Origin: Mytilus trossulus
Lineage: Eukaryota
Assembly: GCF_036588685.1 (NCBI RefSeq)
Contig: NC_086373.1
Coordinates: 29,078,001 to 29,142,000, forward strand
Direction of reading: 5' to 3'
Length of the DNA: 64,000 nt
Shown here: in pieces, positions 6,122 to 56,507 of the stretch
How positions within the stretch are numbered: position 1 is the first letter of the stretch
Layout: each line of letters opens with the position of its first letter
The notes under the pieces: generated by a model
Told to the model about the DNA's origin: nothing
The model's database searches: none
What the model saw: the letters and a program-made list of their open reading frames with translations, nothing else
Made by a program: the position numbers and the translations under genes

Positions 6122-6165
6122 ACGCCAGACGCTTGTTTCGTCTTCAAAAGACTCATCAGGGACGC
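6122..6165 (-). ncRNA. Hammerhead ribozyme, family A, core intact, stems I/III slightly decayed
   Basis: Minus strand GCGUCC-CUGAUGA-GUCU(UUUGA)AGAC-GAAA-CAAGCG-UC/UGGCGU. Confidence 0.75.
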
Positions 6166-6189
6166 TTGAATCCAAAAAAGTTATGTATA

Positions 6190-7468
6190 CCCATGGAAAA
6201 AAGTAAAACCAAATTAAAATTGAAATTAAAAAAACACTCTTTATTTTTTTCTTAAATAATTTGTTAAAATAGAACTAGTTAAACAATATTTAAATATCAC
6301 CTGAGTTTGATCATTAATTATCGATTCGATAAGTTCTTATCTGCACATGCAGCTACTGCACCCGTAAACAGCAAAACAGTTGTTTTAATTCTCATTGTTT
6401 TCAACACTTTAAATAACCAAGTTTATAAAGTTTTGTGATTGACACCTTGTAATGGGTCCTCCGCAATCTTAACCGCAGCAAACTGGCATTTTATCAGCAT
6501 GAGAGAAGCAGGAATGTCGCTGGACAACCGCACGTGTTGTCGGTCATCACTTTTCCACTATTAGTCGTTTTGAGAATAGAAATCATGCAATAAACGATAT
6601 AAAAGACTATCCGAGACCAAAAAGACCCCCTATGCCATCTGCTAGGGAAAATCAAGCATGATGAAGCTTAGTTAAAAAGAAACCCATTGCATACAATACA
6701 AACCTAAAACGAGAGTGGTGGGCATACAGGAGCTTTTTAACAATAATTGTTCGAGATCGACTCATCTCTACTGGTTATTGTGCGATAAGACCATTTCGGG
6801 GACCTTTGATTACGAACAGACACACATTTATTTGTATCCAATGTAGTGCAGAGCTCGCCAAAATTGGAAATAAGCATCGTGGAGGAAGATCCATTGTTGA
6901 AATGGAATTCTGTTTATCTTCCTTGGCCCGATCATAGCCCGGCTTTGAACCATATCGAGCATATATGGGACACTATTGGGTGTTATGTGCGCGAAAGGAC
7001 ATCCAGTCCAAACACGTGATGAAATAAACAATGCCCTTCAACAGAAATGGTCGCTACCTAAGCAACAAATAAATCGATTTATGACAGGAATCATAAGACG
7101 TTAAGTGTCGGTTGACCGTTTGAATGGAGACTGTGAACAAAGTTTTTATTTTTTGGCGTATAACGATCAACCATGATGTGAACAATTATCTTAATATTAA
7201 TTTTGAAATGTCTGACATTGCAAAGTTCGACTTTAGTAAAAGTTGTAAAATGCAGTTTTTTTGTACAAATAACACTTCATTTTGTTTTTACACCTGAGGT
7301 TAGATAAATTATTTTTTTTCAAACATTTTTTGTTCGTTAAAATGCCAATGTAATCATAAACTATGTTTCAATATTATTTACAAATATTTTATCATATTCC
7401 ATCCAAAATAAAAGACTGATTTCTCAAGTTTTAAAAAATCAAGGTGTTGCAATATTTTTTTCCATGTG
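6190..7468 (+). mobile_element. Decayed Tc1/mariner DNA transposon
   Basis: TA|cccatggaaaaaa ... tttttttccatgtg|TA termini. Relic at ~6917-6980 reads LPWPDHSPALNHIEHIWDTIG, matching the Tc1 WPxxSPDLNPIE motif. Confidence 0.85.
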
Positions 7469-7633
7469 TATATCGAAAAAAGGCCAAATGAATTACGAAG
7501 TTGAAGAGCATTGGGGACAAAAATTCCTAAAGGTTTTGCCAAATACAGATAAGGTAATATATGCCTGAGGTAAAAAAAGCCTTAGTATTTCAAAAATTCA
7601 AAATTTTGTAAACAGTTTATTTATTAATATAAA

Positions 7634-8912
7634 TGTTCCAGGCCGTATGAGTATTTGGACAGAACGCGTACGGTCTGGACCTTATGCATACTTTTTTCAA
7701 AATACTCATACGGTCGGACCGTACGCGTACGGTCTGACTAATAATAAGAAGTTGGTGAAGTTTAGTAAATACAAATGCATATAACAGATCAACATAACAT
7801 AACTTGATATAAAAAAGTGCAATTGTAATTGAAATAATTTTTTTATATTTTAACTATTTAACAAAATCACGGTTATTAAATCTGTTAATCTCTTGTATCA
7901 AGCATGTCGATCAGTAAAAGTTAACATCAATTGAATACGATCACTGAAATTGAGGATATCGGAAGTAAACATAATGTGAGAGAAGAACTGTTTTCAAATA
8001 TTTAGCAACTTTACAAAAAAAATGCAAATGCAAAGAAAGATGTATAAACTACAAACATTTAAATGTAAAAAATATTACGTTACTTGTGGAAAAAAAAGTA
8101 AAATCACAAAAATACTGAACTTAGAGGAAAATCAATACGGAAAGTCCCTAATCACATGGCAAAATCAAATAACAAAACGCATGGTTCTATAGCGCTAACT
8201 CTCTCTCTTTAATAACAGTCTCATCAAATTCCGTTATATTTACATGATGCGTTAAATAAACAGCCACACTTAATAAAATAGTCAAAATACTGGTACATCA
8301 GTCATCATCGATAACAATTTTAAAAGGGACAATTTAACAGAACACAAAAACATCTATCTACGAACACATGGATTGACTTGAGTGTCTGACCTCATAAAAT
8401 TTGTATACGACACATAAATTTGTCGTTCAATGTGCATACAAACAGTTTTAAAATTTACATAGGCAATTTAAGCATACAGAGTTAAAAAATCAAAAGTATG
8501 TAAGAACAAATTACAGAAATAGACTGAGATTTGAAATAGTCCAAAAGTTATAGGTAGAATTTATGAGAATCCAAAAATACTTAATTCCACTACGCGAAGA
8601 AACAAGCGATAAAGAAGCAAGCGTCACCTTGGGCGAGAGTCCCAAAATATATAGGCTTCAGTTATACAATAAAAACAGTTAATTCTTTATTGTTCGTTTG
8701 TTCATTAAATTACTCTAATTGTAATAATAACAATTTGTAAAACTAAACAAATAAATTGTGATAAATGTTTATTTAAATTTAACCCATATGATGACATGTA
8801 TGGTTATCTTGTACTAGACCATACGTGTATACTCATACGGTCCGACCGTACGCGTATGGTTGGACCGTACGAGTATACGTATACGGTCCAAATACTCATA
8901 TGGTCTTGAACA
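7634..8912. mobile_element. Non-autonomous TIR element with TGT..ACA ends (Ginger-like)
   Basis: TIR tgttccaggccgtatgagtatttggac / gtccaaatactcatatggtcttgaaca, subterminal cgtacg repeats and near-TSD taaa/taac. Contains a further repeat at ~8092-8600 (also seen at 24121). Confidence 0.75.
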
Positions 8913-9339
8913 TAACCATATCAATGATAATGAATGTCAGCACGAAAGTGCTGACTTCTGAGCTGGTGATACCCTCGGGGAAATAAATCTCCACAAGCAA
9001 CTGCATCGACCCAGTGGTTGTTAAAAAACTCAACATAGATACCAGGACTAAATTTTGTATATACGCCAAAAGACTCATCAGTGATGCTCGAATAAAAAAA
9101 AGTTAAAAAGGCCAAATATAAACCATTCACACTGTAGGAGATATGTATTCTTGTAACTAACATTGCAAAATATGATGTGCTTCGTCGTGTGGAGTGCCTG
9201 TTAAAAACAGGGGTATTCAGTACTTGCCTGCTAGTCAGATATCGTTTGGTTCAGCTTCCGTTAGAAAATCCTATAGACAAAGAGCCAGATTAAGTCGATA
9301 AATCAGCTACTATACGTGTTTAAGCTTGTGGGTCTACAG

Positions 9340-9640: not shown

Positions 9641-10189
9641 CAAAAGGTGTTAAAAATGAGAGGCAAAAGTTACTAAAGGGACAGTCAAACTCATTGATTA
9701 AAAATAACTGACAATGCAATGGCTAAAAATGAAAAAAAACAACCAGCCAAATAATAGTTCACATGCAACAACATAGAAAACTAGACTAAATAAAGACTAA
9801 ATAAAGACAACAGTAGTATAACGCTGTTAGAAATTCATATAGATTGAGAGAAAAAAACAAATCCGGGCTACACACTAAAACTGAGGGAAACACATCAAAT
9901 ATAAGAGGAGAACTACGACTCAACAGAAACACAACATTAAAATGTAACACACACAGAAACGAACTATAATATAACAATGACCATTTTTCTGACTTGGTAC
10001 AAAACGTTTTAATAAAACAAAATTGTGGGTTGAACATGGTTTTGTGGCATGCCAAACCTCCCACATTTATGGCAATGTTAAATATAACATAAACATGATA
10101 ACATTACATGATAGGACTACAATACAAATGAATGATAGAATATATAGGACAGAGAAACGCACGAATAAAAGCTAAAAAAAGGTGCAAGG

Positions 10190-10675
10190 TTTAAAATTCA
10201 ATACGCCAGATGGGGGTTTCGTCCACACAACACTAACCAGTCACGTTCTAATGAATGAAAATATTTCGAAAGCCAAAAAAAAAAAAGGTACAAAGTTGAA
10301 GAGCATTGAGGTCCACAACTTCCAAATATTTGTGCCCAATAGGGCTAGCGTTCTCTGCCTGGGATAAGTAGTTATCAAAGGTACCAGGATTACAATTAAG
10401 TACGCCAGACGCGCGTTTCGTCTACATAAGACTCATCAGTGACGCTAATATCAAAATATTTATAAAGCCAAAAGAACAAAGTTGAAGAGCATTGAGGATC
10501 CAAAATTCCAAAAAGTTGTGCCAAATACGGCTAAGGTAATCTATGCCTGGGATAAGAAAATCCTTAGTTTTTCAAAAATTCAAAGTTATGTTAACAGGAA
10601 ATTTATAAAAATGACCACATTATTGATATTCATGTCAACACCGAAGTGTTGACTATTGGGCTGGTGATACCCTCA
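10190..10675 (-). mobile_element. Retrozyme-like tandem (family A) with two HHR positions (10202 decayed, 10402 intact)
   Basis: Direct repeat of tacgccaga..tttcgtc..aaagttgaagagcattgagg..gcctgggataag about 200 bp apart, then the conserved ctggtgataccctc core. Confidence 0.8.
10402..10445 (-). ncRNA. Type I hammerhead ribozyme, intact (family A)
   Basis: Minus strand GCGUCA-CUGAUGA-GUCU(UAUGU)AGAC-GAAA-CGCGCG-UC/UGGCGU: full core, stems I and II paired, palindromic stem III. Confidence 0.9.
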
Positions 10676-11417
10676 GATCATTCTTATTATTTAGAATAAT
10701 TCATACTTTTGCAAACATTATTTTTTCTTATAAAATGAGTATATAATAGATATAAATAATAAAACCGGTGACTAACTACAAAATTAAAACAAATAAATAA
10801 TTAACCTATACCAGTTTATACAAATTCGCAGCCGCGTTAGCCTAATCGATAAACGCAAAAATGTAAGTGACGTCACATTTGAATTTCTAATCATTTCCCA
10901 AAAATAAGATAGAATAAGGATATAATTCAAGATTATGTTGATATAACATTTATTAATAACACTGAAAATTACATTACTAATTAATATCAAATTGTAGTAG
11001 TAATTAGATAAGAAATTAATTATCTAGCTATGTCGGTATTTCTTCTCAATCAAACTGTAAACCAAATATATCGTATCAATTTAGTCGAATAAAACTAAAA
11101 TCTAAATGAACTGGTTGATCAATTTTCTTTACCATAACACATGAATTCAACAACAAAAAATAAAATTTGCAACTACAAATGAAAAGACATATGACAATAC
11201 CGATGAAAATAAACAACTATTTCATCAATACTAAATGCATACACAGAGCAACAGGAACACCCAACTTGAAGTGGTCGCAGGTGATCCAGAAGATTAAGCA
11301 GATCCTGCTCAACATGTGTCACTTGTCGTGTTGCTCATGTTGTTACAAACCCGGTATATAGTCTAATTCTGTTGGTCACATTCATGAAAAGGGAAGGTAA
11401 TTGTAGTTACAACGTTA

Positions 11418-18730: not shown

Positions 18731-19839
18731 TACAAGAGTGCACACGCTGAAATGTCTCACTTTTTCTTTACTTATCATTGATATTATGTTGATGGTCCTA
18801 AATATAAAGCTTTATTACAACTGTCACACAAACTTAACATTAAACAAGTAAACAAAACATGAAACAAGTAAACAAAACATTAACCAATGAACCATGAAAA
18901 TGAGATAAAGGTCAGATGAACTGTTACAGGCAGTCATGTACAGGAAACAAATCTTCCATACACCAAATATAGTTGACCTATTGCTCATAGTTTAAGAAAA
19001 CAGACCAAAAAAAACCAAAAACTTAACATTGGACAATAAACTGTCAAAATGAGGTCAAGTTCAAATAAAACCTGTGTGATTGACATATAGATCATAAAAT
19101 ATTTCCATACACCAAATATAGACCAATTGCATATAGTATTAGAAAAAAACACCAAAAATCAAAAACTTTACTTTTACCACTGAACCATCAAAATGAGGTC
19201 AAGGTTAGATGACACCTGCCAGCTAGACATGAACACCTTACAATCGTTCCATACACCAAATACAGTAGACCAATTGTATACAGTATAAGAAAAACAGACC
19301 AAACACAAAAACTTAACTACATGTACATGTATAACCACTGAACCATGAAAATAAGGTCAAAGTCAGATGACACCTGCAATTGGACATTTACACCTTACAG
19401 TCCTTCCATACACCAGCTATCCTAGACCTATTGCTTATACATGTTGTATCTGAGATATGGACTTGACCACCTTGTTCACTGATCCATGAAAAGAGGACAA
19501 GTGAAAACTGTCTGACGGGCATGAGGACCTTGCCAGGTATGACATTCCAAATATAGTTATCCTATTACTTATAATAAGAGAGAATTTAACATTACAAAAA
19601 ATCTTAACTTTCTTTACAAGAAGTCACTGAACCATGAATATGAGGTCAAGGACATTGGACATGTGCCTGAGAGAAACTTCTTAACCTGAGGCATCTATAT
19701 ACCAAGGATGAAGCATCCAGGTCTTCAACCCTTTAAAATATAAGTCTTTTGAGTAGTTACCTAACCCCACTTCCATAGTGGCCAGACCACTATTTCTTTG
19801 TAGAGCTTTCTGCAACAAAAGTTGCAGGTTCAAGAAAAA
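18731..19839 (-). mobile_element. HINE-like element with internal ~150 bp tandem repeats
   Basis: Terminal hairpin ctgcaac-aaaa-gttgcag. Repeated accatgaaaatgaggtcaagg / ccatacaccaaatatag units. Confidence 0.65.
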
Positions 19840-34864: not shown

Positions 34865-36531
34865 TGGGAATAGTATATCTAACTATATATATGTCACAGC
34901 TCACCTGAACCACAGGGTTAAGAAGCTAGTGAGCTACTACACAATGTTTATTTGCACAAAACATAGATCAAGTTTGAAATTGGTTGGTGTCACTTTTACT
35001 GTTTTTGAGATGTACCGCCAATTTACCAAAAACATTAAATAAAAAAGTCCCTTTACCGGCTAAGTGTCCAATCGGTATTGCTAAATTTTAAAATTCATCA
35101 CCTTTAATTGCTTGTGGTCAATTTTGTTTCACTTGGCCAAAAGGTTTTTTAAGTGAAGATTTTTTTTCTTAAAGTTATGAACAGCGAATGGTGAGGATAA
35201 AAGCTCACTTATATTATAACAAAAAGTAGATTGATATTCGTGTACTCCCTTTATTATAACAAATGTATTTGACTCATTACAACGATGTGGATGGTATATG
35301 GATTGTTGGTATATTGTGAAATTAGCCGTTGTGTTGATTCCCGACAGGCTCTCAACAGACGAACTACATCTGTGAGAGCTGGTACTGGGTCTTTGCATGA
35401 TGTGGGGAAACTAGCTGTGACAATGCCAAGGATGGTACATGACATTGCTGCCGATATAGAGGCCGGCCGGGATCGACTGACATCTAGAATATCAAGAAAC
35501 GCGCGATTAATATCATAGCGGCTTGATCAGTTTATATACTAAGTTCTGAATGTCCTAGTAACCCATAGCTGACTGTAACAAACAAAAGATTTGCCGAAGA
35601 AGGCTGACCTTTGTCCTAACTCTTCAGATGTTCTATATAACTCTACTAGACATATATATATATATATAATTTGGCAACTGTTAAAGTCTCACTGTACAGA
35701 CAAGTTCAATAGTTTATAAAAGTGCTTATTTGACATATTTGAAATGTACTACGCTTGAAAAATGTATAGAACATTTAGACAATAATTCTATGTAAAATAG
35801 TTTACAAAGTAGAACCCACATACATCAACTAATAAACTATATGAAATAGAATAAATTTCATTTTTCTATTACAATACTCAACCCGATGGTTAAGATGAGA
35901 TAAAAATCTGTGATAATGAATTTTAATCCGAATAAAAATAATTCCGCAAATTCGTTATGTTATCACAAATATAATCCGTTGTAACCAATTTTACAATTCG
36001 TTATTACCATTTTAATTCGTTATCGCTAATAACAAAAAAATAAATATTTTTGGGAGGTCCTAAATAGGTTGCCGTAGTATAACAACCTAACATTGAATGT
36101 ATATAAGAATCACTCTTTGAACAAATCGTATATGCATACATCATAAATCGAGTCTCATAGCTGGACATCGAGAACGTAGAAACATCTATGACTTCATCGT
36201 ACTTTACTGGTGCAAGCAAATTGGTACCGTTAATCATTTTTACTACCACTGGGTCGATGCCTCCGGATCGATCCGCTGGTGGACTATTAGTCCCCGAGGG
36301 TATCACCAGCCCAGTAGCCAGTACTTCGGTACTGGCATGAACATACGGATTTTTTGGTGTTATTAAAATTTGCTGTTACAAAATATTAGAATTTATTATA
36401 AATTAAGGAATGTATCTCCCTCAAACAAAGCTCTGATTCCTTTCATGGATTTGGCCATAATTTTTGGACCTTTTGGGTTATAGCTCTTCATCTTTTTTAT
36501 AAGCTTTGGAGTTTGAATATTTTGGCCACGA

Positions 36532-36567
36532 GCATCACTGAAGAGACATGTATTGTCGAAATGCGCA
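36532..36567 (+). ncRNA. Hammerhead ribozyme, family B, 5' part (split by L2; remainder at 39851-39858)
   Basis: GCAUCA-CUGAAGA-GACA(UGUAU)UGUC-GAAA-UGCGCA, then LINE sequence. UC-UGGUGC resumes after the LINE tail. Confidence 0.85.
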
Positions 36568-36702
36568 ATAAGGACCAATCTATGTTTAGTGAATGAATCG
36601 TCTGCCTATGAAAATGAGGAATTTAAATACGATTTAAAATTCAAAGGCCAACCACTCACCTTCTTTACACCTGCATCTGTATAGGAAATACGTAAAATTA
36701 TT

Positions 36703-38234: not shown

Positions 38235-38486
38235 TTTTAAAATATTTTATATCACTGTAATTTTTGAAGTTTTAAGCAAATACTTTTTTTGAATTTTTTA
38301 AGCAAATATTTTCTGAATTTTTTAAGCATATATATTATTTTTTTTTTAGCAAATATATTATTTTTTTTTTATGAATTTTTAAGCAAATATTTTTAACTTA
38401 TTTTTATTTATACGGGTTCAATGTCTCCTTTATTTTCAATTTGAGTGTTGATCAGTAAACTTAATAGTACACTTTTATATGTCATT

Positions 38487-39683
38487 TATAAGGTCTTTCC
38501 ACTTTTCTGTGGAAAGACCTATTGTTTTTCTTCTGATTATTTTTTTTTTCTTCCGCCTAATTTTGTTCTTGCGATAAACATTTGTTTCGCAATATGTCGC
38601 TTAGATATTTTGTATATAATATCGAACAGTTTATGAGCTTTTGAAATTTACCCTGCGTAAACGAATACTTTTCTTTGTAGGAGTTATCTCCCCAAACACT
38701 GTTTTCCTTGTTATCGCATCTCCTTCGCAACCGTAAAAGATTATGACAAATTTATTTTACAAAATTGCTCGTTATATCCTTCGCATGATTTGTCCTATTT
38801 TGACCGAAGCGATATGACCGCTCCATATGAGAGTTATTTCCCCTTATGCATCTGATATAAGTGATATGAATTTCTATCTTATAAATCATAAGTGATAGAG
38901 ACCTAGGATCTTTTGATTTGAGGTCCCTGGTCCCAAAAAATGAAAATTAGGTCAAGGTCAAAGGTCAAGGTCATATTCTAATATTTGAATTTGGCTTATT
39001 TTCACTTATATCCAAAGACTGTATAAGATATCAACAAATTATTTTTACTAAATTGTTAGTTGCGACATGTCGTAAGATGTAAATTTTGATTGCAAGCGTA
39101 CGTTGAATGTAAAAGGGAGTTTTCTCCCCTCTTGTATTTAAAAATACGCGTTTGGTGATATAACTCATTAACTAAATATAATTAAGACCTATGGTCTTTT
39201 GATTTGAGGTCCTTGGTTTATGACCTTGAAATTGATCTCAAGGTCATAGCTTAATTTGACGTTCTAGATTTTGACCTTTGCTTTTATTCTATATGTATAC
39301 ATGATAAAGACATACAACTTTTAGAAAAAGGTATCAAACCATTTAACCTTGAAAAAAACCAACCGGAAGTGACCTTTTGTAAACTGGAAGAAGCTATTTT
39401 TTTGTACTTATTAATATAAAAGTATATAGAACCAGATATTTTTGGAATCAGTGTCAACTAAATATTCAAATATAATCGGAAGTAACATTTTTCAAACCGG
39501 AAGTAACAAATTATCTCCCTTATTTAAAAAAAATGTATGGAAACAATATATTTTTGGAATCAGCTTACTAGGAGCTATCATTTGACGATTGAAATGACAT
39601 TTTAAACTTGGTTTCACAACTTTTCATATCAAAATACATTGTTTTGATGGAAAGACCTTCAATTGTTCTCTGAACAATTGGTT
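38487..39683 (+). mobile_element. Helentron-associated non-autonomous element (HINE/DINE-1-like) nested in the L2 3' UTR
   Basis: 5' aggtctttcc..ggaaagacct palindrome/subTIR, 3' ggaaagacctt subTIR plus hairpin caattgttc-tct-gaacaattg, with T-rich ends. Confidence 0.75.
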
Positions 39684-40165
39684 TTTAATTTTAGATTATG
39701 TTTGTTTTTATTAGGATCTCATAACATGGGCTTTCATATTTTATTGTTAATACTTGTATATCTGTATGAATATGTTGTAAAGCGCTTAGGGTAATTTTTG
39801 ATATTATATAATGCGCTATTATAAATACTGTATAATAATAATAATAATAATCTGGTGCAAGAAAATTGGTACCGTTAATTTGTTTACTACCACTGGGTCG
39901 ATGCCTCTGCTGGTGTACTATTAGTCCCCGAAGTTATCACCAGCGCAGTAGCCAGTACTTTGGTACTGGCATGAACATACGGATTTTTTTTTGTTATTAA
40001 AATTTGCTGTTTTAAAATATTAGAAATTATTAGAAATTAGGGATGGATCTCCTTCATGCAAAGCTCTGAATCCTTTCAAGGATTTGGCTATACTTTTTGG
40101 ACCTTTTAGATTATAGCTCTTCATCTTTTTTTTTAAGCTTTGGATTTCAAATATTTTGGCCACGA

Positions 40166-40209
40166 ACATCACTGAAGAGACATGTCTTGTCGAAACGCGC
40201 ATCTGGTGC
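40166..40209 (+). ncRNA. Hammerhead ribozyme, family B, one stem III mismatch
   Basis: ACAUCA-CUGAAGA-GACA(UGUCU)UGUC-GAAA-CGCGCA-UC/UGGUGC. Confidence 0.8.
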
Positions 40210-41889
40210 AAGAAAAATGGTAGCGTTATTTTTTTTAATTGAAATTGAATATGAAAAATGAACAAAACAACTACGACCGTTAACAAAAGTGATAATCATA
40301 TACAAACGTTAAACACAAACTGGATAACAGACCAATCCCGCAGAAGGCATTATTTAATAAAGCATAACAAAAACAAAAAAGCTAGCACGAAATTACTAGT
40401 TGAGGAGAAAAAGGATTGTCATTTTAATGTCATTAAATTTTTAGTTTTAATATGTATAAAGTGCTTTCGCATAATCGAGTACCATAGCTGGACATCTGAA
40501 ACGTGGTTTCCTCAAAGAAACATCTTTGGCCGAGTTCAAATAAAACTCTCTAGTTAATTTTACTTACTCGGGTTTTAACAAAACGATTTTACTTGAACCA
40601 CTCGAGTTAACCCCTCTTACCCTGGTTCCAACCCTCACCGAGCTAGGTTTAAACTCGAGAAACTCTTGAATGACGTCAAACCAATGAAATTTTTTTTTAT
40701 TTTTTTATGCTTGGTCAGGGCCTTAGAGTTGCTTAGAGTTCCAAATATCAACTCTAGTTCGTTTACGTGATAATCTATTAACTCTGAAGTCGATTGAATA
40801 GTTTCAAGTGTACTCGTCCACAGATTTTATTGTGTACTTACTAAAATAAATCTGAACATGCTGAAATAGAACAAATCAACTACGGCCGTAAACAAAAGTG
40901 ATAAAAAAAAACACGCTGAAAACTAACTGGGTCACTGACAAATCCCGCTGAAGGCATTAATATTCAATAAAGCATAAAAAAGAAAGCTTTCAAACTCAGT
41001 GAGGAGAAAAAGGGTTGCCATCCTAAAAATCTTTTGAAGTATTCAAATGTGATAGAAATGATTTCATGCAATTACTTTTTCACCAAATACAACTTTTTTC
41101 CAAGGGCTCGATGGTGACCGAAAAGAAATCCAACTATATATTATTGCTGTTATTAAAATTTTAGTTTACATATCTTTGACTGAAAGAGCATTCGCATATA
41201 ACATTACAACTTAACATTGTATATCATGTATATAAAATTCACAAATTTTATTAATCGTATTTCATATATTATATCGAGTCTCATAGATGGACATCGGAAA
41301 CGTGATTTCCTCGAAGAAATACTTTGATTTCAATGTGTACCTTTTTAAATCTAAAAACAAACAAAAAAACAACGACCGCAAACTGGGCAACAAACAAATC
41401 CCCTTGAAGCAATATTAAATAAAGCATTACAAAACAAGAAAGCCTTCATAAAATTACTCAATGAGGAGATAAAAGGTTGTTATTTTAATGTAACGTTTTG
41501 GTGATTTGTTTCAAAATCTTTTGAAGTATTCAGATGTAATAGAAATGATTCCATCCAATTACTTTCTCATAAAATACAACTTTTCTTCAAGGTCTCGACT
41601 ATCACCGAAGAAAAACGTAACTGAAAGGTTAATTGTTGACATTAAATTGTGGTTTTGATTATGTATGCAAAACGTAATTTAATTCAAAATCATATCTATT
41701 GATACAAAACTTTATGTTTAGAGTTACATACTCATATCTTCTTCTATCCATGTCCTTTATAGTCTGTAAATATCGTTTTTTATGTCCTTAGTGCAAATTA
41801 AATAAATAAGCGTAGGATTGACAACGTCATTTTGATTAATTAAAAGCAGCAGCAGATAACCAATATTAACATCACATTAAATTATAATA

Positions 41890-44762: not shown

Positions 44763-45586
44763 CTGCTGAATATATGATCATTGCTAATAGTTTTCACGAT
44801 TATAACCAAAAAAAAATGTCCTTAAAATTCCAAATTAAGTGTCAGCATCCTTTCAATTGCTTGTTCGGTTCGTCTATGAATTTCAGAACTGATACAACTT
44901 GACCTATTGAACCTTTTTATCCTAGACGGATGTGCTCTAAATTTTTATTTTTTTTAAATAGAAGCCAAATCTGCATATGACCCGATCCCTGTGTTTGTTG
45001 ATTGTTTGTTGATTGATCAAAACTTCGGTGACAATTTATAACCAAGTTATTATTAGCATGATAAGGAACATTCAGTTAAATTTTACAGGTACTTGGTCCA
45101 GATGTTTCAAAGCAGAAGATTCTTGAAATAGTTAACGACAAAGATGACGACGACGACGACGACGAAGACGACAAACGACAAGTGATGGCATAAGCTAACA
45201 TGGTCCTTAATACCAGTTTAACTAAAACATACAAAAAAATTCAAACATTATGCATGTTTATAGGAATGATTCTTCCATAAGATAAAACATAAACATGTGT
45301 ACCGAAATATTTAAGAATAAATTCTGTTTTGACCGTTATTTGTTTTTACTACCCTCATATCTTATGTATTTTTTTATGTAAATTCAGTTGTGGCTGTGTT
45401 CGTTTGTCTATTGAATTGGGCAGATGGCATAAAAGTCAAAGAGACTAAAAAAGACCTGCAATGTATGTTACTCAAAAGAAATAGGTTATGAGTACCATTA
45501 TATTCTAGTCTGTAAATGTTTTAGTTCAGAAAGGGAAAAATACATGTTACCGCAATATTTGGCATTTTAAACTTTTTTGGATTCGA

Positions 45587-45630
45587 GCGTCACTGATGAG
45601 CCTTGAGTAGACGAAACGCGCGTCTTGCGT
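45587..45630 (+). ncRNA. Hammerhead ribozyme, family A, core intact, single mismatches in stems I and II
   Basis: GCGUCA-CUGAUGA-GCCU(UGAGU)AGAC-GAAA-CGCGCG-UC/UUGCGU within a short retrozyme fragment (45560-45670). Confidence 0.7.
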
Positions 45631-47149
45631 ATATACTAAATTTGGTCCTGGTATTTTTGATGAGTTTATTGTCAATAAACATGCAAATACTGCAAAGTTA
45701 ATCAGTTATACTCATCAACTGAGATTGTTGTAATAGAAAACTAGCAACTATACCCCATCTCTATATTCTGACAATGGTCGTAATATATGAAGAATCATAT
45801 TATACTTCGATGTCCAGACAAAGTAAACATAATGTAAACTTATAAACTATATACATTGTAAATCACTAGAAGCAACTTTCACTCATATTATAGGTCAAAT
45901 TTGACTTCTTTTACAAAAGATAGTTTATTTAGCAAATTTCCATTAATGCAAAATAAAAACAAAGGAACCGTAAACACTGAATCAATATTTTGTTTATTCT
46001 TTCATCAAGTTTGAAATATACCCCGCTTATCATAATAAACCATTACGTTTATTCAGCAACTATAATTAACAAATCAATAAGTCACGATCAAAAGACAATT
46101 GTTTATTGGATAAAGTTTATCGAACATGATGATTGGAAATTTACAATAAGTATTGGGTCACGTGCCGAGTGGCCCGCAGTGATTAAAAAGTCTTTTATTC
46201 AATATTATCATATCTAGTTATACCATTATATTTATGAGTTACATATTTATATGTACAATTTTTTTATGGTCTGAATACATCGTTTTCATGTCCTTAAAGC
46301 AAATCAAATATATCCGCGTTGCATTTTGCAGCCAAATATAAAAGATCAAATCATAATTGACAACGTCATTTTTAATAAATAAGAGGCACCAATAGATTGC
46401 AAATATTCACATACAATTAATCCATAGAAAATGAATGATATTAAATAGTCATATAAAAAGACATTATCATTTGAACAAAATATGTCAAATATCCGTTTCA
46501 TGTAACTTGATACCTTACTACAGGATTGTTTAGACGATTGCACCTAGTTTGTAGGTTTAAATAGTCATTATTATGTATGATCTTTCTCTAGGGATTAAAG
46601 GTTAGAAATGAACAAGATGATTCAATGTTTAAACCAACATACGATCATTAAAATGTTAACACCTGATTTCACACGAAGAATGAAAATAGTTCTTTTATGT
46701 TATAGATAATGCATAATTTAAGGTTTTCCCTTGGTGTGTTATACGACAAAATAAAAACCTCCCAAACTTAACATTATCTGAATTACATATTACCAATGTT
46801 TTTTTCAACTGATCGGGCAGAGCTTACGTTTCAATTTGCATAATGACAGTCTATTCAAAGATGTGTGTGACACGGATGATTGTCGTTATAATTATTATTA
46901 TTGATTTCTAATCACCTATCAAATACAAAAGAACTGAGTGTATGATACAGGACGAATAAAATACCTAAAATAAGATGTATAGCATTAAATGTGCTAAAGT
47001 ATAGTAATTTAAAGTATCGGCTATTGTATTATTCTGTTTGAAACTTTTCTGATTGTGACATTTACTTTAAATGTGATTTATAAGAAAGAAAAAACATAAA
47101 AAAATGAAATGTTTGGACCCTATTTTCCATGATTTTATGATTAGAATTA

Positions 47150-48215
47150 ACATTCTTAAACTTTTATTTTTGTGGAATAAGAATGCAGTTATTGATTAAT
47201 TTTGATACAAATTAGTAATCGTCATATAATTAAAGTACTTTTTGTACATCAGGATTGGCTGTTCCTTCATAAAATATGCTTATTTTAAGAAAAAAGATAT
47301 TAAATTTTTGTACACGTTGCCTAAAATGCAAATATTTCTTCATTTTACTGAAAATTATTGATCGCCATTGGATTTTGGTACTTTTTTTAGTTAAGAATAG
47401 TTTTTTTCAGTAAAATTTAAAGAATGTCAGCGAAATCAAACCAAAAGTGTATTCGCTTGTTTAAAACAACCAAAATTATTCTTCATTTTATTAAAAAGGA
47501 TACTTTTTATTTGAAATAACTTATTTTAACCATCTTGAGCCAATTCTGCAAATTAGAATTGAGATATAATGAGAATTATATTACTTAAACTTTTATTTTT
47601 GTGGAATAAGAATGCAGTTATTGATTTGTTTTGATACAAATTATTAATCGTCATATGATTTTAGTATTTTTCGTACATCAGGATTGGCTGTTCTCCATAA
47701 AATATGCTTACTTTGAGAAAAAAAGATATTAAATTTTTGTACTCGTTGCCTAAAAATGCTAATATTTCTTCATTTTACTGAAAATTATTGACCGCCATTG
47801 GAATTTTGTACATTTTAAAGTTTAGAATAGTTTGTTTTCATAAATATAAAAGAATGTCAGAGAAATCATATTACAATTTTATTCGCATTGTTCAAAATAA
47901 CCAAAATTATTCTTCTTTTTATTAAAAATTGTACTTTTTGATTTAAAATCAGTTATTTATACCATCTTGAGACAAGTCTGCTTATTAGAATTGAGATAAT
48001 ATGAAACTTAAAATACTTAAACTTTTATTATTTTGAAATAAGAATGCAGTTATTGATTTATTTTGATACCGATTGTTAACTACCATATGGTTTCATTACT
48101 TTTTGTTCATCAGGACTGCTTGTTCTTCATAAATTATGTTTACTTAAAAGAAAAAGATATAATTTTTTTTGTACGCGTTGCCAAAAATGCAAATAGTTCT
48201 TCTCATATTGGAAAG
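47150..48215. repeat. Tandem repeat, ~430-bp unit, ~2.5 copies
   Basis: cttaaacttttatt..gaataagaatgcagttattgatt at ~47155, ~47584 and ~48016. Confidence 0.9.
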
Positions 48216-49447: not shown

Positions 49448-50034
49448 ACTAATTTTTTTCTACGTAAACTTTGATAGATAGTCTTTTCCGTATAATTAAT
49501 TATAAGTTTAAAGTGAATTTGACATTCCCGCCAAAATGTAACAGAACTCAGGAAAGCATGCAGAACAAAGAAACTCAAGCTGGGTGATCTGGTAGGGGTG
49601 ATCCGGCTGAGATCACCTAGATCACCGCTGATAGAACAAAGGAGCTGGGATATAAGATACATTATCAACTTTTACTAAATTTTTCTATACACGAAAGTAG
49701 TTCATATCTAGCTATTCGTGATCATACGTTTATTTTTACATGAAAAAATTGCTGTTTTTACCATTAATGTATTTGTTAAATTCGTATGTGTTTATTAAAA
49801 TTCATTTCTGAACACTGCATTAGCGTCTATGCCTTTTTGTTTTTAATTTGATATATGAGTACTGTTATGAATAGAATAGATTAAGATAATTAGGAAAAGA
49901 TTTATATGGTATTTATAAGTAAAAGTAAATTGTAGCACATTATTTATTGGAGTGATTGATTCTAGTTTGCAATTGTTTTTCCATTTGGAGAAAACTATGG
50001 GTCCCTCATCAAATTCCTTTGCCGTTAATCGGTA

Positions 50035-50423: not shown

Positions 50424-50433
50424 ATGTTGTACC

Positions 50434-50858: not shown

Positions 50859-51029
50859 CTATTATAAAATGTAATCCTGGTACCTTTGATAAATATTAGG
50901 GTATCGAACAATTCGAGTCTAAAAAAGTAAGATTAATTAAAACAAGTGATTTTACAAGTGTTTTTCGACCTATCATTGTTAAACACATTAACTTTTAATT
51001 GGTTCTTTGCTCCAGTTATATTTTCCATT

Positions 51030-53399: not shown

Positions 53400-53732
53400 C
53401 CGTAAACAAATTAAAAATACTTTTAATAATTTCATGCGCCCAAAGCTCTATTCTTGATTTACTTTCATCAGAAACGTTCAAATCCCAAATCCGAGGCTTG
53501 TAAAAGTATCGAAACAATTGAAGAGCTATATGACAAAAATACCTTAAAAAAAACCTCCTAAATTCATATAATGTCAACTTTGCCTGAGGGAGTTGCATTC
53601 TTAGTTTCTTTATAATTTCAAAATTTATAAACTGACAATTTTAGAAAGGTTTGTTATAAATCATGTCAGTACCGAACTACTGACTACTGAGCTGATGCTA
53701 TCATTGGGGACTGATAGTCCACCAGAAGAGTT
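53400..53732 (-). mobile_element. Decayed retrozyme-like unit with HHR relic at ~53436-53478
   Basis: Minus-strand CUGAUGA with decayed stems, plus the shared core gactactgagctg..ggggactgatagtccaccag and gaagagctat motif also seen in family B. Confidence 0.55.
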
Positions 53733-54148: not shown

Positions 54149-55200
54149 TGGAGAACTCTAAAGTGCGATTGTACTCTAAGTGCGATGGTCACGCTAAAGT
54201 GCGATGGTCTACGCAAAGTACGATGATGTCTCACGCTAAAGTGCGATGGTTGTTTTTTCGCTAAAGTGCGATGGTTGTTTGTTCCCTAAAGAACGATGAT
54301 ATTTCGCGCTAAAGTGCGATGGACCAAAGGGTAAGAATCGAGGGCTTTATAATGAATGCTTAATTAAATGTTAAGAAACACTCAATGCAACAATAGTCCT
54401 TTTGTATAATCTAGTATTATAAGGTGTATACCATAGAAAGGTAGTATAATTTAACAGTATGTTAAGTGAATTATTCTTAAGACCGTTATAATTACTAAAA
54501 CGGAAATTAAGGTGTCACAGGATACTATATATTTCTTGTAAATGAATTTTTGACAACTCGTGCGTATTAAATATAATTGGTGAAGCTTGCCGTACACAAT
54601 CTATCGCGTATGGGAACTACACATTCATGTTATATTTTCCGGCAATGTACAAACTATTGTTTTAGCCGATAGTTTATAAATTACGCATGCAAATATGTAC
54701 CTGTATATTGCACACGTTACTTTTCAATAAAAGTGACATTTTAATGGGAACCGCAAAATGAACTACAACATAAACATGATAAATTATGATTCAAATTCAT
54801 CTATTTGCTTCCAATAAAAGCAGGATACAGGATATATTTGTGAATACTACTCGTATGTTTAGGGCCTAAAGTAAAAAGGGTCGACTGCAGGATACAAGTT
54901 ATTCTTACAGCTACCAAAATAAAACACCTTTGCTTTAAGTTTTAAATAAATTAAGTCATTGTCATTTGGTTTAAATTTCTTAATCAAATATTTGTAATTT
55001 GACTACCGGCGTGATTATTTTTAGTTTTTATAAACATTGATAAACGACTGATAACGTTATAATCCAAATACATTTATAACGTCTATACTTTCGCAGACCA
55101 TTGGACTTTAGCGTATGGGAACATCGCATTTTATGGTAAACCATCGCACTTTAGCGTGACATCGTACTTTAGCGTCCCCATCGCACTTTAGAGTCCTACA
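54149..55200. mobile_element. Non-autonomous TIR element (Ginger-like) with taaagtgcgatgg subterminal repeats
   Basis: tggagaactctaaagtgcgat / atcgcactttagagtcctaca termini with a 4-bp TSD AATA. It splits a host repeat. Confidence 0.8.
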
Positions 55201-55699
55201 AATATAAAAGATGAACAACGACACAACAATAAAATGTAAAACGAACTAAGCCTTAGACAAAATCCGATGAGATTAACAAATATAACATCAAAACTAAATA
55301 CATGAATATGGGATAGAAAAGTACCGTGAAACGTCTTATAGTGATGTGAATTCCCACTCAAATATTAGAGGAAACCAATGACACAACAGAAATACAACGT
55401 TAAAATGTAACGAACACAGAAACGAACTGACATGTTCCTGACTTGGTATAGGACATTTTTTAAAGAAAAAAATGATTGTTTGAACCTGGTTTTGTGGCAT
55501 GCCAAGCCTCCCGCTTTAATGGCAATGTTAAATATAACTGTTGTGAACTTACCTATTTATAAAACAAACGGGTCCGAGTGGGCAAAATCTTACATGGGGT
55601 TCACAAAAATATATATACCCCGGCAGTTTCCTGAATATATACTGACAACTCTGTGTTGTTATCCAATCACAAACCTAGACACATTTGTAATCCGTAATA

Positions 55700-56301
55700 T
55701 ATATATATATATATATAAACGAGGCTTAATTGAAAACTAAGTTCAAACCTACGATTGCGTCGGATAAAAACCGCAATTTTTATACTTGTGCATGTAAACC
55801 AAATTTCGTTGTAGAAGGGTCTAAAAACAGCACAAACAACATTTTCCAAAAGACCAAAAAAGTGAAAAAGTATATTTAAACAAAACGCATTTGACTAACA
55901 GGTCGAACAACTGATGTTCTTTAACCCTGCTGACTGCCATTGGCGATTGCCAAAAAAATTGATCACAAGATGTAACAAAATGGATCTTAATATAAATTTA
56001 ATACCAAACAGAAAAATAATAACTTGTGGCCACGATGTTATGCCACAAACATACGGTGACAATATTTTTTTACTACACCAGATCCGGATTTCGACAATGA
56101 ATGTCTCTTCAGTGATGTTAGGGATCAAAACGGTATTTGGAAGGCCATATAAAAAGTACCCTCATTTTTAGATAAAACTCTTGAATTTTAAGAGTCAATA
56201 TAGGATGAACGGATCATATAAACCGGAGGGAATATATGATACAAGCCCAAACGAAAATATATCAACGAGTCTAAATTGAAAACTACGTTCAAACCTACGA
56301 T
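55700..56301 (-). mobile_element. Retrozyme-like unit (family C), ~546 nt period
   Basis: Direct repeat aattgaaaacta(a/c)gttcaaacctacgat at ~55728 and ~56275, flanking the HHR at 56075. A related HHR-less copy lies at ~15680-15960. Confidence 0.7.
56075..56118 (-). ncRNA. Type I hammerhead ribozyme, intact (family C)
   Basis: Minus strand ACAUCA-CUGAAGA-GACA(UUCAU)UGUC-GAAA-UCCGGA-UC/UGGUGU, with all stems paired. Confidence 0.9.
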
Positions 56302-56302
56302 A

Positions 56303-56507
56303 TATATATTAATGAAATAAAATAGTAAAATAAGTTAAAAGTTTTACAGTTCCATTCAATCGATCTCATCCTTCCATTGGGACTCTTCGGGATAACTGAT
56401 ATGGTGCGTTATCAGTTATCCTGAAGAGTCCCAATGGAAGGATGAAATCGATTGAATGGAACTGTTAACTTTTAACTTATTTTACTATTTTATTTTATTA
56501 ATATATA
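56303..56507. repeat. Near-perfect ~100-bp-arm inverted repeat with an 8-nt spacer
   Basis: Arms 56303-56401 and 56410-56507 differ at only a few positions. Confidence 0.95.
56413..56464 (+). ncRNA. Hammerhead ribozyme (family D) in the right arm of a long palindrome
   Basis: CAGUUAUC-CUGAAGA-GUCC(CAAUGGAA)GGAU-GAAA-UCGA-UU/GAAUGGAACUG. Stem I is bulged (CAGUU/AACUG) and stem III is the palindrome AUCGAU. Confidence 0.7.

What the first reader, a model, noticed from the sequence alone, without database searches (positions are those of the whole stretch)
6122..56464. About 15 minimal hammerhead ribozymes from at least 4 families, with covarying palindromic stem III
Seen: CUGANGA..GAAA..UH cores at 6122(-), 9062(-), 10202(-), 10402(-), 14415, 36532, 40166, 44257, 45587, 50035, 50383, 53436(-), 56075(-), 56347(-) and 56413. 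Stem II swaps between families (GUCU/AGAC, GACA/UGUC, GUCC/GGAU). Stem III differs in sequence but is self-complementary in the best copies (ACGCGCGU, AUGCGCAU, AUCCGGAU, AUCGAU). Known: minimal type I HHRs with a palindromic stem III occur in Penelope-like elements and non-LTR retrozymes, cleave as dimers and yield circular RNAs; such retrozymes have been reported in mussels. Inference: several distinct self-cleaving retroelement lineages coexist here, and stem III identity could limit dimeric cleavage to same-family partners.
Basis: partly seen in the sequence, partly recalled or inferred. Interest (0 to 1): 0.85.

Follow-up and report, generated by a model that had tools for sequence, protein, structure and literature searches.

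The report
Mussel hammerhead retrozymes and Penelope tails
The window holds a few intact and many decayed copies of self-cleaving hammerhead ribozymes carried by mobile elements already known from mussels (retrozymes and Penelope-like elements); three of the families seen here are not in the published mussel description.

Summary
All 15 sites exist. A covariance model recovers the 13 retrozyme-type sites and no others. Only 2 are fully intact (10400-10447-, 56073-56120-) and 3 are near-intact. One is cut by a LINE and 7 are dead relics. The pair at 56347/56413 is a head-to-head pair of 5'-truncated 3' tails of a GIY-YIG Penelope-like element (PLE).

Family A (354 nt) is the published Mytilus retrozyme. 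Families C (350 nt), B (573 nt) and B' (548 nt) are further tandem retrozymes. Genome-wide there are about 38,000 motif matches against 2 in the control.

Stem III is an 8-nt palindrome in every amplified lineage. All three inner pairs differ between lineages by compensatory changes, which fits the known double-hammerhead dimer. Stranded RNA reads show B and C transcribed in ribozyme sense, but no read ends pile up at the cleavage site.

Insertions have fixed 3' ends and variable 5' ends; B ends in (TA)n, as the PLE tails do. This fits PLE-type reverse transcription of uncut or circular RNA.

The idea of family-specific dimers is thermodynamically plausible for B against A/C, not for A against C, and is untested.

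The kind is known, and this scan has noted it repeatedly elsewhere in this genome (e.g. s1-820520, s1-818521).

The parts
6077..6184 (-). Family A (subfamily A2, the published type): 3'-terminal fragment covering unit positions 299-354 plus about 50 nt of tail. Near-intact HHR at 6120-6167.
   Evidence: blastn to the array monomer; CM 57.3 bits; sequence
7480..7630 (-). Family A body piece (unit positions 148-298). It is collinear with 6077-6184 and 8909-9119, so the three form one array of about 2.2 units broken by two insertions of about 1.3 kb.
8909..9119 (-). Family A2 piece (290-337, then 6-152). The HHR at 9037-9089 lacks its 3' half: no GAAA and no cleavage site.
   Evidence: (25.1 bits)
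10163..10753 (-). Family A1 rearranged mini-array. Intact HHR at 10400-10447 (GUC, cut between 10408 and 10407). Dead HHR at 10201-10248.
   Evidence: 96% identity to the 354-nt array monomer; Rfam RF00163 33.0 bits; strict scan; CM 75.3 and 21 bits
14402..14476 (+). Family A1 3'-terminal remnant (306-354 plus tail). The HHR has G8A and a stem II mismatch and is dead.
   Evidence: (47 bits)
36207..36567 (+). Family C unit 1. It starts at the first base after a cleavage site. Its HHR (36530-) is cut inside stem III (AUGCGCA^UC).
   Evidence: 87% identity to unit 2; junction read; CM 37.4 bits
36568..39848 (+). LINE insertion that splits the C dimer: RVT_1 ORF at 36703-38076 and a (TAA)n 3' tail. 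It is not part of the ribozyme element.
   Evidence: Pfam RVT_1 E=5.6e-28; (TAA)n followed by 'TC TGGTGCAAG'
39849..40235 (+). Family C unit 2 plus a tail of about 30 nt. Near-intact HHR at 40164-40211 (ACGCGCAU, AUC).
   Evidence: 65.1 bits
44199..44331 (+). Family A 3'-terminal remnant with a dead HHR (CUGGUAG, GAUA).
   Evidence: (27 bits)
45556..45670 (+). Family A2 3'-terminal remnant. The HHR at 45585-45632 has an intact core and one mismatch each in stems I and II.
   Evidence: 20.5 bits; 64.9 bits
50032..50118 (+). Family A1 3'-terminal remnant (318-354 plus a 44-nt tail). The HHR carries C3U and is dead.
   Evidence: 25 bits; 45.3 bits
50379..50426 (+). Family A HHR relic (GGAA in place of GAAA). 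A matching tail piece lies at 50863-50897.
   Evidence: (30.2 bits)
53434..53728 (-). Strongly decayed A/C-like copy: body at 53597-53728 and an unrecognisable HHR at 53434-53479.
   Evidence: 12.5 bits, E=0.13
55713..56301 (-). Family B copy of 1.07 units (unit positions 332-573, then 1-374). Intact HHR at 56073-56120 (GACA/UGUC, AUCCGGAU, AUC; predicted cut between 56081 and 56080). Related RNAs are transcribed in this sense.
   Evidence: 91% identity to the 573-nt array monomer; strict scan; CM 67.1 bits; RNA depth 150-850 in ribozyme sense
55690..55715 (.). (TA)n microsatellite at the 3' end of the B copy. All 9 B/B' ends examined are of this type and lie at the same unit position.
56299..56412 (-). 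Left arm of the palindrome: a 5'-truncated 3' tail of a canonical GIY-YIG Penelope-like element (PLE-D). The HHR motif is mutated (CCGAAGA, GAGA) and there is no tail extension.
56410..56549 (+). Right arm: the same PLE-D 3' tail with an intact HHR core (CUGAAGA, GUCC/GGAU, AUCGAU, AUU at 56421-56453). A tail extension of about 40 nt is present at this end only, followed by TA repeats.

Best explanation
The 15 sites are copies of four lineages of hammerhead-bearing retroelements in a mussel-like genome (1.30 Gb, 14 large contigs).

Thirteen sites belong to non-coding non-LTR retrozymes:
- Family A: 354-nt unit, GUCU/AGAC, ACGCGCGU, GUC. This is the published Mytilus retrozyme.
- Family C: about 350 nt, body 70% like A, GACA/UGUC, AUGCGCAU, AUC.
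- Family B: 573 nt with an unrelated body but the same ribozyme stems as C, AUCCGGAU. A sister lineage B' elsewhere in the genome has AUCUAGAU.

The other two sites are the arms of a head-to-head pair of 5'-truncated 3' tails of a canonical RT/GIY-YIG Penelope-like element whose 3' UTR carries its own hammerhead.

Shown here:
- The motifs and their state at each site.
- The tandem arrays and genome-wide copy numbers.
- Compensatory changes in all three helices.
- Strand-specific transcription of B and C.
- Fixed 3' ends with variable 5' ends.
- The (TA)n junctions of B.
- The link of the palindrome motif to a PLE open reading frame.

Inferred from the literature and from anatomy:
- Multimeric transcripts cut themselves at NUH. 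Two ribozymes most likely pair through the palindromic helix III, as in the double hammerhead.
- Monomers are ligated into circles.
- A PLE-type reverse transcriptase starts at a fixed internal site on uncut or circular RNA and runs round it. This gives tandem arrays with one fixed 3' end and random 5' truncation.
- Because the ribozyme lies just upstream of that 3' end in A and C, truncated insertions leave 'ribozyme plus tail' stubs. Most of the window's sites are such stubs.
For: Motif and chance:
- Strict scan: 2 hits against 0 in 30 simulated sequences.
- Genome: 37,915 against 2. GACA type: 10,290 against 0.

Identity of A:
- The published Mg353 sequence and its primers match.
- Arrays have a 354-355 nt period.

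Other families:
- B arrays of 573 nt and C arrays of 350 nt.
- B' has 739 copies in arrays of 548-553 nt and is 90% identical to B.
- Units have 33-38% GC and no ORF longer than 105 codons.

Covariation:
- 94% of cells are paired, against 14-46% for the slid controls.
- Six pairs change on both sides: one in stem I, two in stem II, three in stem III.
- Non-palindromic stem III intermediates number only 9-46 copies each, against 3,087 (B), 5,295 (C) and 739 (B').
- The minimum-energy homodimer of each family is the double hammerhead.

RNA:
- Depth over the B copy is 150-850 with about 6% of two stranded runs read, at 8-11:1 in ribozyme sense. Flanks are near 0.
- The two letters that turn AUCCGGAU into AUGCGCAU occur in equal read numbers (300/299, 147/145, 64/64, 99/99).
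- Reads with C-family flanks run across the cleavage site.

Insertion anatomy:
- 25 of 27 independent A copies end 38-46 nt after the cleavage site, with 5' starts scattered over the unit.
- 9 of 9 B/B' ends lie at one unit position and run into (TA)n.

PLE link:
- In L039 the motif lies 74 nt after the stop of an ORF that carries GIY-YIG (25.7 bits). That ORF is 54% identical to another PLE ORF.
- The 3' UTRs are homologous.
- The sister lineage shows linked C3-G8 to U3-A8 and U-A to G-C changes.

Literature:
- Palindromic helix III and dimers (PMC4209133).
- Mussel circular RNAs (PMC7229834).
- Internal initiation by a PLE reverse transcriptase (PMC11167929).
Against: - No read starts or ends pile up at the predicted cleavage site 56081|56080 (table 6). 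In vivo cleavage of B and C is therefore not shown. Circles, uncut multimers or library bias could each explain this.
- Reads that 'go back' 538-546 nt fit tandem DNA as well as circles.
- The published A ribozyme cleaves from a single-copy construct, so dimers are not obligatory.
- The compensatory changes amount to about three lineage-level events. They are not independent replicates, and two of them are transitions at CpG sites.
- Within family A the central double mutant ACGUACGU has only 10 scattered copies, which is no more than neutral decay would give.
- No autonomous partner was identified. A fragments are not enriched near PLE genes: 4 of 30 loci, where my rough estimate of the chance number is about 3.7.
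- B lies near PLE genes in 3 of 30 loci, but it is not part of their conserved 3' region.
Confidence: 0.82

Rival explanations
1. Helix III works as a lineage barcode. Each family's palindrome lets its ribozyme dimerise and cut only with its own kind, and new lineages arise by swapping one pair of the palindrome.
For: Stem III duplex energies: A/A -13.3, C/C -10.5, B/B -10.9, B'/B' -7.4, against A/B -0.7, C/B -1.0, A/B' +1.4 and B/B' -2.8. B and C share identical stems I and II and differ in the ribozyme helices only by the G-C to C-G swap in stem III, plus one letter of loop 2. Hybrid stem III forms are rare, 9-46 copies each.
Against: A/C cross-pairing is strong at -8.9. In tandem transcripts the partner is the neighbouring unit of the same molecule, so no discrimination is needed. 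The rarity of hybrids is what simple descent from master copies predicts. There is no experiment.
Confidence: 0.2
2. The ribozymes act as monomers, with helix III as 2 bp plus a tetraloop. The full palindrome would then be a by-product of CG-rich sequence and descent, not a dimer interface.
For: The published mussel ribozyme cleaves from a construct with one ribozyme at about 0.1 per min. That paper describes invertebrate helix III as 2 bp capped by a tetraloop (PMC7229834). Within family A the central double mutant shows no excess, with 10 copies.
Against: Pairs 3-6 and 4-5 of the 8-mer cannot form in a hairpin. Even so they change only by compensation between the amplified lineages: GC to CG, and CG to UA with 739 copies. 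From the single-mutant counts (38 and 46 among 3,087) I estimate that independent mutation would give about 0.6 copies of that double change. Monomer folds do not form helix III, whereas homodimers do. Single-ribozyme transcripts can also pair in trans in vitro.
Confidence: 0.25
3. The palindrome at 56299-56549 is a foldback or MITE-type DNA element that carries a chance hammerhead-like string.
For: It folds into a hairpin of -151 kcal/mol and hits plant miRNA hairpin models. Stem I is interrupted, pair 10.1-11.1 is G-U, and RNA depth is almost nil.
Against: In L039 the same arm continues upstream into a GIY-YIG ORF on the same strand. The arms are truncated at variable points at the centre, leaving 0 to 1 kb between them. 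A tail of about 40 nt is present at one end only, and the ends lie in TA repeats. These are published PLE hallmarks (PMC8557442). The sister PLE keeps the motif with linked U3-A8 and G-C changes.
Confidence: 0.04
4. The arrays are ordinary satellite DNA that grew by unequal crossing-over, and the ribozyme is a passenger without a role in spread.
For: Arrays reach 15-19 units of near-identical sequence. DNA-level expansion of existing arrays is likely to add to copy number.
Against: There are thousands of dispersed short copies on all chromosomes. Their 3' ends are fixed and their 5' ends variable. They are strongly transcribed in one sense. The published circular RNAs exist for A.
Confidence: 0.1
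5. The motifs are chance matches in AT-rich repeats.
For: Rfam at its gathering score reports nothing in the window.
Against: 0 hits in 30 simulated sequences. Genome counts of 37,915 against 2 and 10,290 against 0. CM E-values down to 1e-22. Compensatory changes in the helices.
Confidence: 0.01

Closest known systems
Non-LTR retrozymes of Mytilus galloprovincialis (Cervera and de la Pena 2020, PMC7229834; construct Mg353, HHR A and HHR B)
   Same: Family A has the same ribozyme sequence, cleavage site, flanks and unit length of about 350 nt. It also shares the low GC content, the tandem repeats and abundant RNA.
   Different: The paper reports about 5,000 motifs in two families that share the same stems. 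This assembly holds about 38,000. They include GACA/UGUC-type families C (5,295 copies), B (3,087; 573-nt unit, longer than the 170-400 nt range the paper gives) and B' (739), which the paper does not describe. The fixed 3' ends and the (TA)n junctions are not described there either.
Minimal hammerheads of Penelope-like elements (Cervera and de la Pena 2014, PMC4209133; Craig et al. 2021, PMC8557442)
   Same: The palindrome arms match on several points: a ribozyme in the 3' region of an RT/GIY-YIG element, a short palindromic helix III (AUCGAU), inverted 5'-truncated copies, a tail of about 40 nt at one end, and a microsatellite target.
   Different: Pair 10.1-11.1 is G-U. Stem I is 2 bp, then a loop, then 5 bp. 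A sister lineage carries U3-A8 in place of C3-G8.
Double-hammerhead dimers of newt satellite 2 and avocado sunblotch viroid (Forster et al. 1988, as cited in PMC4209133)
   Same: Helix III is weak or palindromic and becomes a long helix between two ribozymes of a tandem transcript.
   Different: Here helix III is a full 8-nt palindrome. The mussel A ribozyme is reported to cleave from a single-copy construct as well.
Rfam RF00163 Hammerhead_1
   Same: The consensus core, the GUC..GAC stem II and the ACGCGCGU stem III are those of family A.
   Different: The best window copy scores 33.0 bits, below the gathering score of 34. The B/C types and the PLE type score lower or not at all.
Plant LTR retrozymes (PMC4918200)
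   Same: They are also non-autonomous retroelements whose transcripts are cut by hammerheads and circularised.
   Different: The plant elements have type III ribozymes within LTRs, a primer-binding site and polypurine tract, 4-bp target duplications and Gypsy-type mobilisation. None of these is present here.

Membership tests
Hammerhead ribozyme, type I | Conserved core CUGANGA ... GAAA ... NUH in the type I order (stem I open) | tested here: met
   Intact at 10400-10447(-), 56073-56120(-), 40164-40211(+), 45585-45632(+), 6120-6167(-) and 56421-56453(+). Mutated or truncated at the other 9 sites.
Hammerhead ribozyme, type I | Three helices supported by compensatory changes | tested here: met
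   94% of cells are paired. Six pairs change on both sides, spread over stems I, II and III. Slid controls give 14-46%. Caveat: only 3-4 lineages.
Hammerhead ribozyme, type I | Score at or above the Rfam RF00163 gathering threshold | tested here: not met
   The best window copy scores 33.0 against 34 bits. Elsewhere in the genome 42 of 74 scored candidates pass, so the family passes but the window copies just miss.
Hammerhead ribozyme, type I | Site-specific self-cleavage | tested here: inconclusive
   RNA read ends do not pile up at 56081|56080. The A-type sequence was shown to cleave in vitro by others (PMC7229834). B, C and PLE-D are untested.
Animal non-LTR retrozyme | Short non-coding tandem units of low GC, each with one type I hammerhead | tested here: met
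   Arrays of 354, 350, 573 and 548 nt units. GC is 33-38% and no ORF exceeds 105 codons. B at 573 nt is longer than the published 170-400 nt range.
Animal non-LTR retrozyme | Abundant RNA of ribozyme polarity | tested here: met
   B and C: depth 150-850 with about 6% of the runs read, 8-11:1 in ribozyme sense, flanks near 0.
Animal non-LTR retrozyme | Unit-length circular RNA | not testable with these tools
   Reads cross the cleavage site and 'go back' one unit. Tandem DNA templates give the same picture. RNase R treatment or 2D gels are needed.
Penelope-like element (canonical, with endonuclease) | RT ORF with a C-terminal GIY-YIG endonuclease upstream of the motif | tested here: met
   Met in a longer copy, not in the window. 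L039:1607-2098(-) has GIY-YIG at 25.7 bits (cut-off 22.6) and is 54% identical to a 588-aa PLE ORF. The motif lies 74 nt after the stop. The RT part of that copy was not seen. The window holds tails only.
Penelope-like element (canonical, with endonuclease) | Inverted 5'-truncated copies, a 30-40 bp tail at one end, and a microsatellite target | tested here: met
   Head-to-head arms separated by 0-1 kb. The 40-nt extension is present on the right arm only, and TA repeats lie at the ends. The hallmarks are as described in PMC8557442.

The most novel reading that the evidence does not exclude
The 8-nt palindrome of helix III is an evolvable self-recognition code. A single compensated pair swap (G-C to C-G between C and B, C-G to U-A between B and B') would create a ribozyme that dimerises only with its own kind, and this would found a new retrozyme lineage. 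The lineages would then be copied by Penelope-type reverse transcriptases that start at a fixed internal site on the circular RNA.
Probability: 0.15. Interest if true: 0.65.

Novelty: new member of a known kind. Interest (0 to 1): 0.3.

Why it matters
The kind of element is established, so the window adds examples rather than a new principle.

What could be useful:
1. A chromosome-level mussel genome holds roughly eight times more hammerhead motifs than first reported. This includes three expressed or amplified retrozyme families (C, B, B') that are absent from the published description.
2. The families form a natural series of compensated helix III palindromes. This makes the dimer model, and the specificity idea, directly testable with a handful of constructs.
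3. The fixed 3' ends, the variable 5' ends, the (TA)n junctions and a Penelope tail pair in the same microsatellite give concrete genomic support to the proposal that Penelope-like enzymes copy retrozymes from uncut or circular RNA.

Tried and rejected
- Rfam at gathering score found no hit in the window. Only the permissive mode showed three sub-threshold Hammerhead_1 matches.
- I first read the 56347/56413 palindrome as a MITE or foldback with a chance motif: long hairpin, weak stem I, no RNA. I dropped this after finding the GIY-YIG ORF upstream of the same arm in L039, the homologous PLE 3' UTR, and the one-sided 40-nt tail.
- Comparing mutation density in core and non-core positions among 78 PLE-D copies is uninformative. 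Inserted copies decay neutrally whatever the master copy does.
- Counts of hybrid stem III forms do not separate selection from simple descent. Within family A the central double mutant has 10 scattered copies, which is no excess.
- A search for further large families with G-S...S-C stem II found 33 hits against 5 in the control, mostly mutated A copies.
- RNA read ends gave no sign of cleavage.
- The 'goes back' joints cannot tell circles from tandem templates.
- In the 30 GIY-YIG loci held, A fragments occur at about the chance rate. B occurs in 3 of 30 loci but outside the conserved PLE sequence.
- Only one canonical ribozyme of another type was seen there (L063).

Full report
**What is at the coordinates**

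The window is AT-rich (68% A+T) with one N gap. It lies on the largest contig of a 1.30-Gb assembly with 14 large contigs. Reading the 15 sites shows the order expected of a type I hammerhead: stem I 5' strand, CUGANGA, a stem II hairpin, GAAA, an 8-nt stem III, NUH, stem I 3' strand.

A strict scan asked for an exact core, stem I of at least 4 bp, stem II of at least 3 bp and stem III of at least 3 bp. It finds two sites, 10400-10447(-) and 56073-56120(-), and none in 30 order-2 Markov simulated sequences.

Rfam at its gathering score finds nothing. In permissive mode Hammerhead_1 scores 33.0 bits (cut-off 34) at 10402-10445(-), 25 bits at 50034(+) and 20.5 bits at 45587(+).

I built a covariance model from 26 distinct copies, five of them from this window, and ran it with filters off. 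It finds 12 sites at E<1e-3 plus 53434(-) at E=0.13. The positions are therefore right and complete.

The state of the copies is less good than the finding implies:
- Two are intact.
- Three are near-intact (40164+, 45585+, 6120-).
- One is cut by an insertion (36530+).
- Seven have a destroyed core or a deletion (9037-, 10201-, 14411+, 44252+, 50032+, 50379+, 53434-).

**What the elements are**

Genome-wide, the pattern CUGANGA-GWC..GWC-GAAA-N6-UH occurs 37,915 times, against 2 for the reversed control. Many hits lie in tandem arrays.

- **Family A** (GUCU/AGAC, ACGCGCGU, GUC) forms arrays with a 354-355 nt period. Its ribozyme and flanks match the cloned Mytilus galloprovincialis retrozyme Mg353 and its primers (supplement of PMC7229834). 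Both published flank variants are in the window.
- **GACA/UGUC-type ribozymes** number 10,290 against 0 in the control. Subtracting them from the total leaves about 27,600 for the A type.
- **Family C** (AUGCGCAU) has 5,295 copies in arrays of 350 nt. Its body is about 70% identical to A.
- **Family B** (AUCCGGAU, AUA or AUC) has 3,087 copies in arrays of 573-578 nt. Its body is unrelated to A.
- **Family B'** (AUCUAGAU) has 739 copies in arrays of 548-553 nt and is 90% identical to B.

No other large family with a G-S...S-C stem II exists: 33 hits against 5. Units have 33-38% GC and no ORF longer than 105 codons.

The 2020 paper reports about 5,000 motifs in two families that differ only in loops 1 and 2 and the top of helix I. 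In the paper library searched here I found no description of C, B or B'.

**The copies in the window**

- 10163-10753(-) is a rearranged A mini-array, 96% identical to the array monomer, with one intact and one dead ribozyme.
- 6077-9119(-) is an A array of about 2.2 units broken by two insertions of about 1.3 kb.
- 36207-36567 and 39849-40235 are a C dimer. A LINE (RVT_1 ORF at 36703-38076, (TAA)n tail) sits inside AUGCGCA^UC of the first ribozyme.
- 55713-56301(-) is 1.07 units of B with an intact ribozyme.
- The remaining sites are stubs of 75-130 nt that hold only the ribozyme and the roughly 40 nt that follow it.

**Why stubs: insertion anatomy**

In 27 independent loci, fetched around top Hammerhead_1 matches, array coordinates and PLE genes rather than chosen for their ends, 25 A copies or arrays end 38-46 nt after the cleavage site. 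Their 5' ends fall anywhere in the unit, and length ranges from 0.8 to 19 units.

All nine B and B' ends in hand lie at one unit position (about 374) and run into a (TA)n microsatellite. These include the window copy and a tail-to-tail pair of arrays in L033.

A fixed 3' end with variable 5' truncation is the signature of target-primed reverse transcription. The fixed end is not the cleavage site, and the copies run through that site. The template was therefore uncut or religated (circular) RNA.

A purified Penelope-like enzyme starts reverse transcription at fixed internal sites of its RNA, and genomic insertion ends coincide with those sites (PMC11167929). Microsatellite targets, (TA)n among them, are described for Neptune and Naiad elements (PMC8557442). 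This supports, but does not prove, the published proposal that Penelope-like elements mobilise retrozymes (PMC7229834; bioRxiv 10.64898/2026.07.22.740005).

An earlier follow-up of this scan on other DNA of this genome reached the same reading for a 566-nt family (s1-820520). I saw that note only after my own analysis.

**The palindrome at 56299-56549**

I first took it for a foldback element with a chance motif. The motif CUGAAGA-GUCC..GGAU-GAAA-AUCGAU-U has 38 exact copies. Anchoring on the flanks alone gives 78 copies, with U or A at position 17. These are often head-to-head pairs with 0-1 kb between the arms.

In the longer pair L039, the arm continues upstream on the same strand into an ORF with a GIY-YIG domain (25.7 bits, cut-off 22.6). 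The stop codon lies 74 nt before the motif. That ORF is 54% identical (E=2e-46) to the C-terminus of a 588-aa ORF of another PLE family, and the two 3' UTRs align.

In the window the right arm has a 40-nt extension that the left arm lacks, and both arms end in TA repeats. Inverted 5'-truncated copies, a one-sided tail of 30-40 bp and a ribozyme near the 3' end are the published hallmarks of Penelope-like insertions.

The sister family carries UUGAAAA and AGCGCU. Among 126 copies of the two families, C3/G8 goes with AUCGAU and U3/A8 goes with AGCGCU. In the 100 rows listed I saw four exceptions. So the tertiary 3-8 pair and a helix III pair both covary.

The window arms themselves are dead tails, with almost no RNA. 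Together they would fold into a hairpin of -151 kcal/mol.

**Helix III and dimers**

On an alignment of 26 distinct copies, 94% of cells pair, against 14-46% for the slid controls. Six pairs change on both sides: one in stem I, two in stem II, and all three inner pairs of stem III.

The stem III differences between lineages are:
- C-G to U-A between A and C.
- G-C to C-G between C and B.
- C-G to U-A at the centre between B and B'.

The inner two pairs cannot form in a hairpin of 8 nt. Their conservation therefore fits an intermolecular helix, the double hammerhead long proposed for metazoan type I ribozymes (PMC4209133).

Non-palindromic intermediates exist only as 9-46 scattered copies each. 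For B' the double change has 739 copies; from the single-mutant counts I estimate that independent mutation would give about 0.6. The predicted minimum-energy homodimer of each family is the double hammerhead, 5-12 kcal/mol below two monomers.

Limits of this evidence:
- It amounts to about three lineage-level events.
- The A-to-C and B-to-B' changes are transitions at CpG sites.
- Within A the central double mutant has only 10 scattered copies.
- The published A ribozyme cleaves from a single-copy construct.

**Specificity idea**

Computed stem III duplexes are -13.3 (A/A), -10.5 (C/C), -10.9 (B/B) and -7.4 (B'/B'). Cross pairs are -0.7 (A/B), -1.0 (C/B) and -2.8 (B/B'), but -8.9 (A/C).

B is thus orthogonal to A and C, while A and C are not orthogonal to each other. 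Since neighbouring units of one transcript can pair, discrimination may have no role. This remains a hypothesis for the bench.

**RNA**

Two stranded RNA runs and one random-primed run with the same species label were laid on 55400-56800.
- Depth over the B copy is 150-850 with about 6% of the stranded runs read. In bin 56105-56151 it is 575 against 74 in one run and 847 against 76 in the other, in the direction that means RNA of ribozyme sense.
- The flanks and the Penelope tails are near zero.
- Hundreds of reads match only the 42-nt ribozyme and continue into family C flanks on both sides, crossing the cleavage site.
- The two letters that separate AUCCGGAU from AUGCGCAU occur in matching read numbers in every run and direction.
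- No pile of read ends marks the cleavage site.
- Reads that go back 538-546 nt fit circles and tandem templates equally.

So transcription of B and C is shown. Cleavage and circles are not.

**Verdict**

The elements are of a known kind and one family is the published one. The window adds members (C, B and a Penelope-like tail pair) and illustrates their decay.

The points of some interest are the compensated palindromes, the fixed 3' ends with (TA)n junctions, and the U3-A8 variant in a sister Penelope-like family. The scan has flagged the same elements many times elsewhere in this genome.

Noticed in passing
L044, L060-L064, L067, L072 (3' UTR about 110 nt after the PLE stop); genome list: A canonical GIY-YIG Penelope-like family carries UUGAAAA in place of CUGAAGA, i.e. 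U3 and A8 instead of the C3-G8 tertiary pair. It also has stem III AGCGCU instead of AUCGAU. The two states are linked across 126 copies; in the 100 rows listed I saw four exceptions. This looks like a natural compensated core variant.
   Followed up: partly
L001-L035 and L059, L069: 25 of 27 independent family A copies or arrays end 38-46 nt after the ribozyme cleavage site (...CCTTTGATAACTATTTAC), while their 5' ends are scattered over the unit. One copy (L023) has flanks that look like a target duplication of about 30 bp.
   Followed up: partly
L033:6586-6640; window 55690-55715; L042, L072, L074-L077, L034: All B and B' ends lie at unit position about 374 (GACTCGTTT|ATATAT) and run into (TA)n. 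In L033 two arrays meet tail to tail across one (TA)7 run in perfect mirror symmetry.
   Followed up: partly
window 36568-39848: A LINE with an RVT_1 ORF (36703-38076) and a (TAA)n tail is inserted exactly inside stem III of a family C ribozyme (AUGCGCA^UC).
   Followed up: yes
window 56299-56301 and 55713: On the minus strand the 3' end of the left Penelope tail (..TAATATATATATC) abuts the 5'-truncated start of the B copy. The B copy in turn ends in (TA)n. Both elements seem to have entered one ancestral TA microsatellite.
   Followed up: partly
L063 (minus strand, position 2539): A further canonical hammerhead (stem I UUCUGU/ACAGAA, stem II ACCGC/GCGGU, stem III AGCGCU, cut after CUA) lies next to an inverted Penelope-like fragment. 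This is a fifth ribozyme type in the genome.
   Followed up: no
window 56153-56173: Most RNA reads of family B carry a 21-nt duplication relative to the window copy (joint 56173 to 56153: 217 and 402 reads). The expressed copies therefore differ from this one.
   Followed up: no
G000: There are at least 149 GIY-YIG matches, with open frames up to 1,056 aa. Both C-terminal (canonical) and N-terminal (Naiad-type) arrangements occur, often as tandem pairs about 4.3 kb apart or as inverted pairs. Penelope-like elements look recently active in this genome.
   Followed up: partly
window 47145-48202; 2282-2650; 18954-19318; 8819-8886: Unrelated tandem repeats: 432 nt x 2.5, 53/159 nt, and 144 nt x 2.5. 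A short hairpin also hits miRNA models weakly.
   Followed up: no
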